In this document: positions 1,795-25,204 of the stretch, one piece after another
Layout of the letters: each line of letters begins with the position of its first letter
Position numbering within the stretch: the first letter of the stretch is position 1
IMG/VR virus record: IMGVR_UViG_3300042465_005589
Span: 62,001 to 126,000 of that record
Length of the DNA stretch: 64,000 bases
Strand: one strand, 5' to 3'
Notes under the pieces: generated by a model
What the model was told of the DNA's origin: nothing
The model's input: the letters and a program-made list of their open reading frames with translations, nothing else
The model's database searches: none
Position numbers and translations under genes: made by a program

Positions 1795-2674
1795 TTAATA
1801 CGATGAGAATACTCGTCTTATTGAGAATCTTCGGAAGGATTATTGTTTCCCTTCTTTTCCACCATCTTTTGAATGGTAATCCTCATTGCCGATTGGTTAG
1901 ACCAATCACTCCTTAAGATATCATTTACTCTCTCATTATTCAACTCTCTTTAACCTTGCGAGCTAACTCCGGATTCGACTCCGTAGAGGTTTTTGGCGAG
2001 AATACATTCAGACTTGCGGTCATCCTGTGCAACGAACAGCTCGTTACTATGTAGGCAACTTGTCAATGATACCTGACAGACACTTTTGCTTTTTTCTGTT
2101 TAGTTTTTCACCATATTGAAAATAGTTATTGTGTTGTGGATGTGTCCAAGTAGAGGTCTGTCTTAGGCTTCATCATCTTTTGGACGAAGAAATACCAACC
2201 TACTCGGTAGAGCGTCCCCACTCTCATATTTTAAGAATTCTTCGAATCAAAATCTTGGTAGATGTTTGATAAGGATAATGACAGCACCACCTGTTACTTA
2301 TCTTGTCTTTCGACTTTAAGATTTCTCTCATATTGGAACCCGTAATAATTAAGTTGGATAACCTAACTTCTTACTTGATTCCTATCACTTATTCCTATTG
2401 GAGTTCCCCCCTCAACCGAAAGACCCACATCTCCCGGTCACCTAACCACTTTCTCTAAAGCGTTGCCCTCAATACTGAAGGTCAGATGGTATGTGACTTG
2501 TATACTCGAGTCCCATTTCTGAGACCGCAAACCTGTTAACACAACAGATTCACTTTAGCCCGGTTTCCCGGTTTATTTAAGGATGATATACCACCCATTA
2601 TCGTTTTTTACTCCACCGAAGTGGGTAAAGGATAATCTAAAATTTCTAAGAACGTCTTGAGGTTTCCCTCATTT
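1795..2674 (-). ncRNA. ~880-nt highly structured RNA, GOLLD-like candidate
   Basis: No ORF >=60 aa, raised GC, many GNRA/UUCG hairpins, own promoter and terminator, beside tRNA-like genes. Confidence 0.65.
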
Positions 2675-2973: not shown

Positions 2974-3121
2974 ATAAAATTTGTAAACCCTTGAGAAGGA
3001 ATCTGTGGGCGTGTATAGGATTACTTGTCTACCTTCTATCCATCCGGGTCTCTCACCCGACGAAACTTTACTACAAATAAATTCGTAGTTCCATCCCCCA
3101 CCAAATTATGGTTTACTTTTG

Positions 3122-3211
3122 TGGTATCAGATGGGCTCGAACCACCGGCACAGAGTCTTTCGTTACTCCTGCTCTACCAAAGGAGATAAATCTCCACTGA
3201 GCTATAATACC
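3122..3211 (-). ncRNA. tRNA-like RNA with hairpin inserted in D-loop and 8-nt anticodon loop
   Basis: Acceptor GGTATTA/TGATACC, T-loop GTTCGAG, D-loop insert GGAGATTTATCTCC. Confidence 0.6.
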
Positions 3212-15123: not shown

Positions 15124-15144
15124 TGAGTATCTCTATCTCAATTG

Positions 15145-15238
15145 TAGTCAGGAGAGGAATCGAACCTCTCTACAGGGTGCTACCCGTCATCCGTGACCTT
15201 CCATCGGACTCGAACCGACCTTGTATCCAACCTGACTA
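15145..15238 (-). ncRNA. tRNA shell 4 with a nested second T-arm
   Basis: AGTCAGG acceptor; internal TCGGTTCGAGTCCGA. Confidence 0.6.
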
Positions 15239-15362: not shown

Positions 15363-15486
15363 TAGTCAGAACAGGGGTCGAACCTGTAATAAAAGACAAG
15401 CGGTTAGTCCTTTCACAAGGATTAGGGATTATGTCTATTCCCACATTTAACACACCACTGCGTACACCAATTCCGCCACCTGACTA
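15363..15486 (-). ncRNA. tRNA shell 5 (Leu-type D-arm, ~60-nt cargo)
   Basis: AGTCAGG acceptor, GGCGGAATTGGTGTACGC, T-arm. Confidence 0.65.
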
Positions 15487-16829: not shown

Positions 16830-16902
16830 TAGCGTAGGGCAGGTAACGCTCCTGCTTTGTTCGGCTTATGAGACCGATGGGATACTATACCCCCCCCTCG
16901 CG
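16830..16902 (-). tRNA. tRNA-Met (CAT), atypical, initiator-like C1 mismatch
   Basis: CT-CAT-AA loop; T-loop AGCGTTA. Confidence 0.6.
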
Positions 16903-16919
16903 ATGTATTATTTATTTTG

Positions 16920-17026
16920 CTGACTAATAAGGATTTGAACCTTAATCTCCCTTCCCCTGAGAAGCCCACGTTCCAGGGACTCGAACCCTGTTTTGGAGGA
17001 TGGTGTGCACCATTACACTATAATCA
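16920..17026 (-). ncRNA. tRNA shell 7 with a nested second T-arm
   Basis: Outer AAGGTTCAAATCCTT, inner CAGGGTTCGAGTCCCTG. Confidence 0.55.
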
Positions 17027-17076
17027 ATCGGATGCTTCGAATCATCCATTCCCAAGGTAATTAATCTTGAGTTTTG

Positions 17077-17147
17077 CGGTCTATGACGGTAACGCTCCGT
17101 CTACTCAACAGTGACAGTGTTGGATGATGCTTCTTCACTAATAGACC
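17077..17147 (-). tRNA. tRNA-Asp (GTC)
   Basis: CT-GTC-AC loop, G73, T-loop AGCGTTA. Confidence 0.8.
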
Positions 17148-17216
17148 TTGTTTTTATTCTCAACAAAGATAGGTAGAACAATTTAAACTACCAAATCTTT
17201 TTTTATTTTATTTTTG

Positions 17217-17288
17217 TGGAGGTACACGGTAACGCTCCGTGTTCTGTGATTTGCAAAACCACTGTAATTGCTTTTATACGATACCCCC
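17217..17288 (-). tRNA. tRNA-Cys (GCA), atypical (A73)
   Basis: TT-GCA-AA loop; 5' end overlaps the endonuclease stop codon. Confidence 0.65.
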
Positions 17289-17918
17289 ATTATTTATTTT
17301 CCTTCCCAATCTCCATCCTTCCGGAATTAAATCTCCTTTAAATATTTTTTTATTCTCAATTTCATTTGTTATCCAACAAGTCCCATACTGAGAATTATTT
17401 TCCCCATTACCTTGTCCTTTTCGAGATTCTTTCATTTTCTCAATAGATTCGGGGCTATGTTTTTTCCCTTTAAAATTATCATACTTAATCTTCCCCTCTT
17501 TATGTAGTTTTTTTACTCCTTCTTGTCTTACACGAATCATTTTATCTCGATATTCCGGGTCTTTCCATCTTTCTTTCATAAGAATACTAGACGCTATTTG
17601 ACCCTTTTCCCAATCTTTTTTTGTAAATCCACCTGAACCACCTTCTTTAAGATTCATACATAATTTATCGGAGATTAAAATCTTATCAACAATTTTTAAC
17701 TCTCGAATAACTAACTCTTCTCTTGTTAGTAAAAACTCCAAAATTTCTTTTGTGTGGTTTTCTTTACCGTATTTTCTAATAGAATATCTTAATCGTTTTC
17801 CACTACCCAAATAACCATCTTCTAAATTAGTGGTACTGTGCATTCCGATATAAAATCTATTTGTAACATTACAAGTTGTTTTATAAATGTAATGTATATG
17901 TGGTTTTTTTCTCGCCAT
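17274..17918 (-). CDS. Seg-like GIY-YIG homing endonuclease with NUMOD3-like motif
   Basis: YIYKTT..FYIGMHST..YLGSG; FKGKKHSPESIEKM. Confidence 0.88.
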   Translation of the reverse strand: MARKKPHIHYIYKTTCNVTNRFYIGMHSTTNLEDGYLGSGKRLRYSIRKYGKENHTKEILEFLLTREELVIRELKIVDKILISDKLCMNLKEGGSGGFTKKDWEKGQIASSILMKERWKDPEYRDKMIRVRQEGVKKLHKEGKIKYDNFKGKKHSPESIEKMKESRKGQGNGENNSQYGTCWITNEIENKKIFKGDLIPEGWRLGRKINNGGIV

Positions 17919-17975
17919 TTTGTTCTTTTACTATAAATATCTCAATATATAGTAAAAGTACAAAAATGTTTAAAG

Positions 17976-18047
17976 TACTGCCACGGAGAATCGAACTCCG
18001 ATTTTATGGATGAAAACCATATATCCTGACCGTTAGATGATGGCAGC
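17976..18047 (-). tRNA. tRNA-Glu (TTC)
   Basis: TT-TTC-AT loop. Confidence 0.85.
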
Positions 18048-18152
18048 GAATTTTGGATAGATGAGGTTCTATCCGGACCAGGACTTTCTCCCTTGGGAGA
18101 TGTCATTTTTACATTATCAATATTTCAATTAACTTGTTTCTTTTTGATGGTA

Positions 18153-18183: not shown

Positions 18184-18615
18184 TTTTATTCTTCTTTTTT
18201 TTCTTCTTCGATTAAAACATTTTTTAATCCGTAGGTTACTCCTAATATTGGTGAGTAATCCATAACCAACTCTTCTCTTATATCGTCCATATCTTGTTTT
18301 TTAATTCGGTACAAAGATAATCTTTTATTTCATTCCGACAACTATAAACCAAAAAAAAATCCACCTTTTTTGAAGATGGATTTTTGAATATTTTTTTTAC
18401 TTAAATATATATCATACCATCGACTTCCAAGTTGTATCTCTACCCTCAGTTCCCGCTATCGTAAGTAATATGTTTAAAGTTTGCATTTGTTGTGTTATTG
18501 TAATTTCTAATAAATATACGACTTTTTATAAAAGTGTCAAGTCTTTTTTTATTTATTTTTTTAATAACGATGATTTTAAAACTATTTATAGATAATAAAC
18601 GTTAAAAACTTTAAT

Positions 18616-18839: not shown

Positions 18840-19184
18840 TTAATAATCCCAAATATCTTTATCTTTATCTCTTTTAAGTAATTTTTTATATTCGAGAACT
18901 TTTTTTGGATTTATAAATCTAATTCCGTTATATAGGAATGAATGATTATCAATTAAATCATCAATATCATATTTGGGCCAATTATCGAAGAACTCAATAT
19001 CTTTGGTTCTATATTCTCCTTTATCATTGAATCCCCATTTTGATGGTCGTATAATAACATCTAAATCGTTAACATCATCAACCATACCGGTTATCACTAA
19101 TGGTGCCGAACCAAAAACAGCATAATCCTCAGAGTTTAAATTATAATCCTTGAGTTTATCCATTAAAAATTTAAAGTTTTTCAT
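18840..19184 (-). CDS. Minimal nucleotidyltransferase (Pol-beta superfamily)
   Basis: VFGSAPL..G..DLDV. Confidence 0.7.
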   Translation of the reverse strand: MKNFKFLMDKLKDYNLNSEDYAVFGSAPLVITGMVDDVNDLDVIIRPSKWGFNDKGEYRTKDIEFFDNWPKYDIDDLIDNHSFLYNGIRFINPKKVLEYKKLLKRDKDKDIWDY

Positions 19185-19202
19185 ATTGATAAATATATAA
19201 AA

Positions 19203-19400
19203 AAAAGTTTAACAACCCCGCCCTTGGGTCGTAGCGGGCAACAATGGGAAATCCGGAATTCGTCGTGTTCGTCACCGGCGTACTAGTCCTTATCTATCCT
19301 TTACCATATTTCTATGGTGCTACTATTGGGAGGTCACCCCTATCAACACGTCTAGTCCATTAATTTTTTAGAGTATGGACACCCCGGTTGTTAAACTTTT
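19203..19400 (-). ncRNA. Orphan structured RNA, 198 nt
   Basis: Perfect 15-bp closing stem, multibranched interior. Confidence 0.6.
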
Positions 19401-19405
19401 TAATT

Positions 19406-19481
19406 TGGGATATTGATAGGATTCGAACCTATATCCTCCCGGCCTTACGCCGGTCGCACGTCCAATTGTGCTTCAAAATCC
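19406..19481 (-). ncRNA. Degenerate tRNA-like gene with 5-nt anticodon loop
   Basis: Intact T- and D-arm; CCGGC-GTAAG-GCCGG. Confidence 0.55.
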
Positions 19482-19552: not shown

Positions 19553-19623
19553 CGCAGACCGTAGGAATCGAACCTACCCATCGAGGTTTTGGAGACCTGA
19601 CCGACGCCTTGTCTGTGACCTGC
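19553..19623 (-). tRNA. tRNA-Trp (CCA)
   Basis: CT-CCA-AA loop, G73. Confidence 0.8.
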
Positions 19624-19627
19624 ATTT

Positions 19628-19787: not shown

Positions 19788-19789
19788 TG

Positions 19790-19859
19790 AGGTCTCGGTG
19801 GGAATCGAACCCACTCTGTTAGTTTTGCAGACTAACCGGTCGCCACGACCATCAAGACC
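19790..19859 (-). tRNA. tRNA-Cys (GCA)
   Basis: CT-GCA-AA loop, U73. Confidence 0.8.
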
Positions 19860-24833: not shown

Positions 24834-24910
24834 AATTTTACCCCACTTCACCGGCTTAACGGACCGGCTGCCATATGGGAGTGGGGGTTTCCTGTTGTAT
24901 CAGGACTCCG

Positions 24911-24982
24911 CGGACTTGGGGAATCACGATATCCCGACCCTTCGCTTAACAGGCGAACGCTCTTCCTCTGAGCTACAAGTCC
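24911..24982 (-). tRNA. tRNA-Asn (GTT), atypical T-loop
   Basis: CT-GTT-AA loop, G73. Confidence 0.75.
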
Positions 24983-25131
24983 AATTTTGACTACTACCTG
25001 ACTCCTTTCGAACTTTGCAGGCTCGTATCATTCAATAATAGTAGTCCAAGGCGTTACGCACCCATCTGATAACTTTACTTCTCTTGAGTCCGGATAAGCG
25101 CTTACCAACTCGGGGGTTGTTTCCTTGTTTG

Positions 25132-25204
25132 TGGGGACTACCGGTTACGCTCCGGTCTCCTTGATTCTTCAGACCAATGCTTTCACTAGATTAGCTTAAT
25201 CCCC
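25132..25204 (-). tRNA. tRNA-Phe (GAA)
   Basis: CT-GAA-GA loop; T-loop AGCGTAA. Confidence 0.78.

What the first reader, a model, noticed from the sequence alone, without database searches (positions are those of the whole stretch)
17217..17918. Seg-like endonuclease ORF ends inside a tRNA-Cys gene
Seen: the last codons GGG-GGT-ATC-GTA-TAA (G-G-I-V-stop) are the first 15 nt of tRNA-Cys. This copy has A73 whereas a normal U73 Cys gene exists at 19790. Known: T4 SegB sits in and mobilises the tRNA region. Inference: tRNA maturation would cut off the endonuclease stop codon, coupling nuclease expression to RNase P and creating a non-stop mRNA for SmpB/tmRNA.
Basis: partly seen in the sequence, partly recalled or inferred. 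Interest (0 to 1): 0.6.

Follow-up and report, generated by a model that had tools for sequence, protein, structure and literature searches.

The report
Homing endonuclease gene ending inside tRNA-Ala
A selfish SegB-type homing endonuclease gene fills the gap between two tRNA genes of a large freshwater phage and takes its stop codon from the next tRNA, which is tRNA-Ala and not tRNA-Cys; this is a tighter version of the arrangement already described for phage T4 segB.

Summary
The overlap is real. ORF 17274..17918 (-), 214 aa, ends on a TAA formed by nucleotides 13-15 of a cloverleaf at 17217..17288 (-).

The cloverleaf is not tRNA-Cys. The anticodon-stem register puts UGC at positions 34-36. 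It also has G3:U70 and A73, so it is tRNA-Ala(UGC), the only Ala tRNA in the 156-kb phage record. It carries an odd T-loop (AGCGUUA) and is missed by default ARAGORN and by Rfam.

The ORF is a full-length homologue of T4 SegB (37% identity, GIY-YIG plus NUMOD3). It is under purifying selection (dN/dS 0.07-0.15).

A near-identical phage allele without the gene (L114) shows that the cassette replaces a 61-nt Glu-to-Ala spacer exactly from tRNA edge to tRNA edge. The cassette has no in-frame stop of its own.

Among 87 distinct relatives, most start 40-65 nt after an upstream tRNA. Fifteen stop 0-10 nt before a downstream tRNA and 11 stop inside it. All eleven 5' leaders folded, including T4's, form a hairpin over the start codon or the bases just before it.

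The idea that tRNA processing curbs endonuclease expression was proposed for T4 segB in 2008. It remains untested here. I class this as a new member of a known kind, with a minor twist.

The parts
18355..18385 (-). Terminator-like hairpin upstream of the unit. The scan finds no other such site on this strand until 17048-17029.
18048..18107 (-). Conserved ~60-nt leader element directly before tRNA-Glu. It is present in the endonuclease-less allele L114. In L098/L118/L120/L130 it lies between tRNA-Glu and tRNA-Ala.
   Evidence: only a weak Rfam DUF2693-RNA match (24.6 bits against an 81.3 cut-off)
17975..18047 (-). tRNA-Glu(UUC) with a canonical T-loop. It is the left boundary of the cassette and the likely recognition target by analogy with SegB.
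   Evidence: SegB recognition of T-arm and tRNA 3' end from PMC2330249
17919..17974 (-). 56-nt 5' leader of the endonuclease gene. A stable hairpin (window 17918-17965) has a 3' arm that covers the five bases before AUG and the A of AUG.
   Evidence: -16.1 kcal/mol, z -4.9; the same kind of hairpin in 10 of 10 relatives including T4 segB
17274..17918 (-). SegB-family GIY-YIG/NUMOD3 homing endonuclease ORF, 214 aa. The conserved core ends at G205-R206. The tail KINNGGIV is unusually long for the family.
17274..17288 (-). 15-nt overlap: codons 211-214 plus the TAA stop equal tRNA-Ala positions 1-15.
17217..17288 (-). tRNA-Ala(UGC) with G3:U70 and A73, T-loop AGCGUUA, no GG in the D-loop and no encoded CCA. 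It is the only Ala tRNA in the record.
17076..17147 (-). tRNA-Asp(GUC), next gene in the array, with the same AGCGUUA T-loop.

Best explanation
This is a free-standing SegB-family homing endonuclease cassette: a hairpin leader plus a GIY-YIG/NUMOD3 ORF. It has replaced the spacer between tRNA-Glu(UUC) and tRNA-Ala(UGC) in the tRNA array of a large freshwater phage, probably one infecting Bacteroidota. Shown: the cassette runs exactly from the 3' edge of tRNA-Glu to position 1 of tRNA-Ala. It has no in-frame stop of its own, so translation runs 15 nt into the tRNA gene and ends on a TAA that is native to the tRNA (also present in alleles without the cassette). Shown: this is one end of a family-wide continuum in which the ORF starts 40-65 nt after one tRNA and stops within a few nt of, or inside, the next. 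Inferred by analogy with T4 SegB: the enzyme recognises the T-arm and 3' end of a tRNA gene in cassette-less phages and cuts there, and repair copies the cassette using the flanking tRNA genes as homology arms. Inferred: the gene is transcribed as part of the pre-tRNA precursor. The leader hairpin limits initiation, and RNase P cleavage at tRNA-Ala position 1 leaves an mRNA ending on codon 210 without a stop. Only unprocessed precursors could then give the full 214-aa protein, and ribosomes on processed RNA would need rescue. I take the overlap to be a tolerated by-product of tRNA-to-tRNA packing that adds to an already low expression, not a purpose-built switch.
For: Identity: phrog_314 homing endonuclease, E 1.4e-34. 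NUMOD3 scores above the Pfam cut-off. T4 segB gives 37% identity over residues 8-208. There are 4799 relatives, those listed being 203-275 aa and mostly 207-225 aa, and the invariant residues are kept. dN/dS is 0.15 against L005/L006 and 0.07 against L002. Cassette limits: L114 is near-identical through the leader element and tRNA-Glu and again from tRNA-Ala G1. It has a 61-nt spacer where the window has the leader plus ORF. Other cassette-less alleles are L088, L094, L098, L106, L118, L120 and L130. The tRNA is real: 16 distinct sequences all have G1-C72, G2-C71, G3:U70 and A73, with compensatory changes at acceptor pairs 4-7, all five anticodon-stem pairs and T-stem pairs 1-3. It is the sole Ala tRNA in the record. 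Family pattern over 87 distinct proteins: 50 start 40-65 nt after a tRNA, 15 stop 0-10 nt before a tRNA and 11 stop inside one. T4 segB starts 41 nt after one tRNA and stops 5 nt before tRNA-Arg. Hairpins over or abutting the start codon were found in 11 of 11 leaders. A 64-66%-identical lineage (L135) also ends inside tRNA-Ala, with a 10-nt overlap in a different frame. The T4 precedent for both controls and for T-arm recognition is PMC2330249. The association of segB with tRNAs across phages is PMC13096335.
Against: There are no transcript data. The four metatranscriptome runs held only contigs, which cover the tRNA genes with flanks of other alleles, and none covers the endonuclease gene. 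Co-transcription, RNase P cleavage and any effect on protein yield are all inferred. Endonuclease activity and target are not tested. The upstream tRNA-Glu T-arm differs from the T4 SegB core motif at two positions. The tRNA has a non-canonical elbow and fails the Rfam model, so efficient processing cannot be taken for granted. Most relatives keep their own stop, so the overlap is not needed for the family's way of life.
Confidence: 0.72

Rival explanations
1. The overlap is a selected attenuator. Cassettes without their own stop are obligately coupled to tRNA maturation. RNase P turns the mRNA into a non-stop message, and tmRNA/SmpB (or ArfA/ArfB) removes the product. This sets endonuclease dosage and protects the phage's own tRNA genes from a relaxed-specificity nuclease.
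For: The run-on junction at tRNA-Ala persists in two lineages that are only about 65% identical, and it uses two different reading frames. Overlaps recur with eight different tRNA species. The family shows a second, conserved layer of repression, the start-codon hairpin. T4 authors argued that SegB must be kept very low.
Against: 76 of 87 relatives have their own stop. The 87%-identical relative stops 9 nt before its tRNA. Overlap lengths range from 2 to 38 nt with no preferred geometry. The extra residues are unconserved. There is no RNA or protein evidence.
Confidence: 0.18
2. The cloverleaf is a decayed or non-functional tRNA-like remnant that is not processed. The ORF then simply ends in non-coding DNA and no coupling exists.
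For: It is missed by default ARAGORN and by Rfam even at E<=10. The T-loop is AGCGUUA, the D-loop has no GG and no CCA is encoded.
Against: The alanine identity elements are invariant, and 16 distinct sequences from many phage contigs show compensatory stem changes. It is the only Ala tRNA in an array that otherwise covers 19-20 amino acids. The same T-loop occurs in neighbouring Asp and Met tRNAs. The sequence is present in metatranscriptome contigs (weak evidence).
Confidence: 0.06
3. One reading: a second tRNA-Cys copy with an aberrant A73 discriminator is overlapped by the ORF.
For: The letters GCA occur in the anticodon loop.
Against: The pairing register puts UGC at 34-36 and GCA at 35-37. 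ARAGORN calls Ala(UGC). G3:U70 plus A73 are alanine determinants and are invariant in 16 relatives.
Confidence: 0.01
4. The endonuclease gene is a decaying or inactive passenger. The C-terminal run-on would be the first step of its erosion.
For: The tail after the GR motif is 8 aa against the usual 1-3 aa. Damaged copies exist elsewhere in the family (L021, L072).
Against: The ORF is full length with all invariant family residues. dN/dS is 0.07-0.15. The identical gene occurs on six contigs from different samples.
Confidence: 0.04

Closest known systems
Phage T4 SegB (GIY-YIG homing endonuclease in the T4 tRNA cluster; PMC2330249)
   Same: It is a full-length homologue (37% identity) of about the same size, with GIY-YIG plus NUMOD3. 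It is free-standing between tRNA genes, starts about 40-56 nt after a tRNA and has a hairpin over the start codon. Its stop lies next to the downstream tRNA. Related phages show presence/absence polymorphism.
   Different: T4 segB has its own stop 5 nt before tRNA-Arg, whereas here the stop is tRNA-Ala nt 13-15. The host phage is an uncultured freshwater phage, not a T-even phage. Activity and target are untested here.
SegB homologues associated with tRNA genes across phages (PMC13096335, 2026)
   Same: That survey reported a statistical co-localisation of segB homologues with tRNA genes in many phage groups, including phages of Bacteroidota. The survey here finds the same association.
   Different: The sections of that paper read here (abstract and section 10) report co-localisation within 1 kb and segmental amplification. 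They do not mention the edge-to-edge cassette geometry or ORFs ending inside tRNAs. Its other sections were not searched for either point.
Phage T5 F-TflI/II/III endonuclease ORFs in a tRNA cluster (mentioned in PMC2330249)
   Same: These are endonuclease ORFs embedded in a phage tRNA cluster, for which lowering of expression by precursor processing was proposed.
   Different: I did not compare these proteins with the window's ORF. No sequence comparison was made here.
Mitochondrial tRNA punctuation with incomplete or overlapping stop codons
   Same: mRNAs are delimited by excision of flanking tRNAs, and ORF ends abut or overlap tRNA genes.
   Different: In mitochondria the stop is completed by polyadenylation. 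Here cleavage would remove the stop together with four sense codons, and no completion mechanism is known. This is an analogy only, from general knowledge.
I-TevI-type translational control by a start-site hairpin
   Same: A stable hairpin sequesters the initiation region of a homing endonuclease gene.
   Different: I-TevI is intron-encoded and is released by late-promoter transcripts. No such promoter was identified here (one search gives only chance-level matches).

Membership tests
SegB-type GIY-YIG homing endonuclease | N-terminal GIY-YIG catalytic module | tested here: met
   The YIY...YIG motif and the family's invariant residues are present. phrog_314 gives E 1.4e-34. The protein aligns with T4 SegB over residues 8-208. 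The Pfam GIY-YIG and SegE_GIY-YIG models score below their cut-offs.
SegB-type GIY-YIG homing endonuclease | C-terminal NUMOD3 DNA-binding motif | tested here: met
   PF07460 scores 22.5 bits against a cut-off of 20.4, at residues 151-171.
SegB-type GIY-YIG homing endonuclease | Free-standing ORF between tRNA genes of a phage tRNA cluster | tested here: met
   The order is tRNA-Glu, then the ORF, then tRNA-Ala, all on the same strand. The same geometry holds in T4 and in most of 87 relatives.
SegB-type GIY-YIG homing endonuclease | Presence/absence polymorphism at an otherwise homologous locus | tested here: met
   L114 and seven other contigs have the Glu-Ala junction without the gene.
SegB-type GIY-YIG homing endonuclease | Site-specific cleavage of the gene-less allele at a tRNA T-arm/3' end, followed by homing in mixed infection | not testable with these tools
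   This needs purified protein and cultured phages. The only indirect support is that the left cassette edge lies at the tRNA-Glu 3' end.
SegB-type GIY-YIG homing endonuclease | Hairpin occluding the translation initiation region (proposed for T4 segB) | tested here: met
   Window: z -4.9, with the A of AUG in the stem. 10 of 10 relatives including T4 show a comparable hairpin. This is a prediction only.
tRNA-Ala | Cloverleaf with a 7-nt anticodon loop, U33, anticodon UGC and a purine at 37 | tested here: met
tRNA-Ala | G3:U70 pair and A73 discriminator (AlaRS identity set) | tested here: met
   Both are present in the window and invariant in 16 of 16 distinct relatives. They were not part of the search pattern.
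tRNA-Ala | Canonical elbow: T-loop T54-Psi55-C56 and D-loop G18-G19; match to the general tRNA model | tested here: not met
   The T-loop is AGCGUUA and the D-loop lacks GG. There is no RF00005 hit at E<=10 and no default ARAGORN call.
tRNA-Ala | Processing by RNase P and charging with alanine | not testable with these tools
   Only metatranscriptome contigs were available, and these cannot show RNA ends.
   GCA lies at positions 35-37 and the discriminator is A. The true tRNA-Cys is at 19789-19859.

The most novel reading that the evidence does not exclude
SegB-family cassettes that lack their own stop codon, and end inside the next tRNA, form a recurrent selected class. In this class RNase P maturation of the tRNA and completion of the endonuclease are mutually exclusive on each transcript, and ribosome rescue acts as the dosage governor of a selfish nuclease. 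This would be a bacterial-virus counterpart of mitochondrial tRNA punctuation. A linked possibility is that the widespread odd T-arms in these arrays are alleles that escape T-arm-reading nucleases.
Probability: 0.15. Interest if true: 0.6.

Novelty: new member of a known kind. Interest (0 to 1): 0.35.

Why it matters
The result corrects an annotation: a hidden tRNA-Ala, not a Cys variant. It shows with exact gene-less alleles that SegB-type cassettes occupy tRNA-to-tRNA spacers edge to edge, so tightly that about one in eight relatives ends its ORF inside the next tRNA. That gives a natural series (own stop at 0-10 nt, overlaps of 2-38 nt) on which the 2008 hypothesis that tRNA processing restrains a homing endonuclease could be tested. 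It also flags a class of phage tRNAs with non-canonical elbows that standard tRNA finders miss, which affects counts of phage tRNA repertoires.

Tried and rejected
1. RNA evidence. One run search and one read-laying run on 1,101 bases (within the operators' limit) were made. Only Logan contigs of four metatranscriptomes were available. They cover tRNA-Ala and tRNA-Glu with flanks of other alleles, and none covers the endonuclease gene. Short contigs that match the tRNA almost exactly can be explained by allele branching in the assembly graph, so I do not count them as evidence of processing.

2. Odd T-loops as escape alleles. I tested whether odd T-loops mark tRNAs next to the endonuclease, as escape from SegB's GGTTCRANTCC recognition. 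There is no positional enrichment: 3 of 59 upstream, 5 of 40 downstream and 61 of 523 elsewhere. No baseline from arrays without the gene was available.

3. Single-base deletion. I first thought the run-on arose from a recent one-base deletion relative to the 87%-identical copy (AAA ATG AAA TAA against AAA ATA AAT AAT). L135 shows that a 64-66%-identical lineage also runs into tRNA-Ala, so the junction type is older. I drop the simple deletion story.

4. Megablast of the region against deposited phages found only short tRNA matches.

5. Sigma-70 promoter matches are at chance level and would not suit a Bacteroidota host anyway.

6. Technical slips. One alignment used wrong-strand coordinates for L114/L130 and was repeated correctly. 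The MAFFT alignment of the tRNAs was poor at the 5' half, so stems were counted by anchored parsing instead.

7. The large protein-representative search, structure prediction and complex prediction were not used because the family assignment was already clear.

Full report
**Observation**

On the minus strand, ORF 17274..17918 (214 aa) ends with GGG GGT ATC GTA TAA. The 72 nt from 17288 down to 17217 fold into a cloverleaf. It has a 7-bp acceptor stem, a short D arm, a 5-bp anticodon stem and a 5-bp T stem. Codon 211 starts exactly at cloverleaf position 1, so the overlap is 15 nt (17274-17288).

**The tRNA is Ala, not Cys**

- The only anticodon-stem register that pairs leaves a 7-nt loop in which UGC occupies positions 34-36. 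GCA is one step out of register.
- ARAGORN at a 90% threshold calls tRNA-Ala(UGC) at 17216-17288, with a G3:U70 wobble pair and A73. These are the alanine identity elements. A73 is thus expected and is not an anomaly of a Cys gene.
- The true tRNA-Cys(GCA) with U73 is at 19789-19859.
- Default ARAGORN and Rfam, even at E<=10, miss the Ala gene. Its T-loop is AGCGUUA and its D-loop has no GG.
- It is nevertheless a real gene family. A pattern search that fixed only the anticodon loop and T-loop found 47 viral loci.
- ARAGORN at its 90% threshold called 16 distinct tRNA-Ala(UGC) genes with this T-loop among the loci held; the window's own sequence is represented by its identical copy L091.
- All 16 have G1-C72, G2-C71, G3:U70 and A73. 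All show compensatory changes at acceptor pairs 4-7, at all five anticodon-stem pairs and at T-stem pairs 1-3.
- It is the only Ala tRNA in the whole 156,626-bp virus record. With relaxed calls, that record's array covers 19 amino acids, plus a Trp-like gene.

**The ORF**

- It matches PHROG 314 (homing endonuclease, E 1.4e-34) and NUMOD3 above the Pfam cut-off.
- It aligns with T4 SegB over residues 8-208 at 37% identity.
- A word-indexed search found 4799 relatives; the 120 listed are 203-275 aa, mostly 207-225 aa.
- The conserved core ends at a G-R pair (residues 205-206). Relatives then have typically 1-3 more residues, whereas the window has 8, KINNGGIV.
- dN/dS is 0.15 against the 91%-identical lineage and 0.07 against the 87%-identical one. 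The gene is therefore maintained by selection.

**What the cassette is**

- Contig L114 is the exact gene-less allele. It is near-identical to the window through a 60-nt leader element and tRNA-Glu(UUC) up to one base past the discriminator. It is identical again from tRNA-Ala position 1 onward.
- Between these points L114 has a 61-nt spacer, where the window has a 56-nt leader plus the ORF.
- The inserted DNA therefore carries no in-frame stop. The TAA belongs to the tRNA and is present in all gene-less alleles (L088, L094, L098, L106, L114, L118, L120, L130).
- The same spacer holds a different nuclease gene (DUF559 plus HTH) in L100/L103/L107, so it is a hot spot.
- The window's genotype occurs unchanged on six other IMG/VR contigs.

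**Family pattern**

I surveyed 87 distinct relatives on the loci then held (the window and L002-L133: encoding contigs and IMG/VR viral contigs). L135 was fetched later and is not among them.

| Feature | Count of 87 |
|---|---|
| Start 40-65 nt after a same-strand tRNA | 50 |
| Stop 0-10 nt before a downstream tRNA | 15 |
| Stop inside the downstream tRNA (overlap 2-38 nt) | 11 |

- The overlapped tRNAs are Gly, Gln, Lys, Ile, Trp, Ala, Glu, Ser and Met.
- Two of the 11 overlapping copies look damaged. A few of the others belong to the same lineage.
- Of 45 copies flanked closely on both sides, 13 lie between two tRNAs for the same amino acid.
- T4 segB fits the pattern: it starts 41 nt after a tRNA and stops 5 nt before tRNA-Arg.
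- The 87%-identical copy (L002-L004) stops 9 nt before a tRNA-Glu.
- A 64-66%-identical lineage (L135) sits in the same Glu-Ala spacer. It also ends inside tRNA-Ala, by 10 nt and in another frame.
- The overlap is thus recurrent and can persist, but it is a minority state.

**Expression**

- The window's leader folds into a hairpin (z -4.9) whose 3' arm covers the bases before AUG and its A.
- Ten of ten other leaders tested, including T4's, form comparable hairpins over or abutting the start codon, despite different sequences.
- The scan finds no terminator-like site on this strand between 18355 and 17048.
- The 2008 SegB paper proposed two controls: a hairpin over the initiation region, and processing for tRNA-Arg that cuts between the last and the stop codon of segB. 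It also showed that SegB recognises the tRNA T-arm and cuts at tRNA gene 3' ends (PMC2330249).
- A 2026 paper documents a wide association of segB with tRNA genes (PMC13096335).
Here RNase P would leave an mRNA ending on codon 210 with no stop.
- I could not test this. The available RNA runs were contigs only and did not cover the gene.

**Verdict**

This is a SegB-family homing endonuclease cassette packed edge to edge between tRNA-Glu and a non-canonical tRNA-Ala, using the tRNA's own TAA as its stop. The anatomy, homology, gene-less alleles and family pattern are shown. Co-transcription, RNase P cleavage, ribosome rescue and homing are inferred. I regard the overlap as a tolerated by-product of this packing and not as a dedicated switch.

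Noticed in passing
window 1800-2207 (-): A full-length GOLLD RNA (Rfam RF02032, 306 bits, model 1-416) lies in the same phage, upstream of the tRNA array. This fits the known link of GOLLD with phage tRNA clusters.
   Followed up: no
window 16831-16901, 17076-17147, 17216-17288, 25131-25204, 24910-24982 (all -); loci L002-L133: This is a class of phage tRNAs with non-canonical T-loops (AGCGUUA/AGCGUAA, ATCGURA, UGCRAAU and others). Positions 54/58 often appear swapped from U:A to A:U, or position 55 is G, and the D-loop lacks GG. About 11% of parsed tRNAs in endonuclease-bearing arrays have such loops, and several are missed by default tRNA finders. They are not enriched next to the endonuclease. 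Two literature searches found no description.
   Followed up: partly
window 18048-18107 (-); L098, L118, L120, L130: A conserved ~60-nt element precedes tRNA-Glu in the window and in L114, but lies between tRNA-Glu and tRNA-Ala in other relatives. There is only a weak Rfam DUF2693-RNA match (24.6 bits). It may be a small structured RNA or a processing leader.
   Followed up: partly
L100 3351-4286 (+), also L103, L107: An unrelated 311-aa ORF (DUF559 Vsr-like nuclease fold, E 3.5e-14, plus a C-terminal HTH and an N-terminal zinc-finger-like motif) fills the same Glu-Ala spacer and stops 11 nt before tRNA-Ala. A second nuclease family thus uses the same site.
   Followed up: partly
window 15363-15485, 16920-17026, 15144-15237, 3121-3211 (all -): These are tRNA-model matches or tRNA calls of 91-123 nt, far longer than a normal tRNA. 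They may be tRNA genes with inserts or introns.
   Followed up: no
window 19407-19480 and 19553-19624 (-): Two odd tRNAs. One has the anticodon loop CGUAAGG, is called Leu(UAA) only at relaxed threshold and has no long variable arm. The other matches the tRNA-Sec model weakly (30 bits) but has a CCA (Trp) anticodon.
   Followed up: no
window 19190-19400: A G+C-rich stretch between ORF 18840-19184 and the tRNA at 19407-19480 has no ORF and no Rfam match at E<=10. It looks structured but was not analysed.
   Followed up: no
loci L002-L004, L009, L018, L022, L026/27, L031, L036, L040, L055, L059, L075: Endonuclease copies are often flanked on both sides by tRNAs for the same amino acid (13 of 45 closely flanked copies). 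This suggests that the upstream tRNA travels with the cassette, or that local duplication occurs as reported for SegB-driven amplification (PMC13096335).
   Followed up: partly
L002 911-1786: A related phage contig encodes a protein with a Por_Secre_tail (type IX secretion sorting) domain, which points to a Bacteroidota host for this phage group.
   Followed up: no
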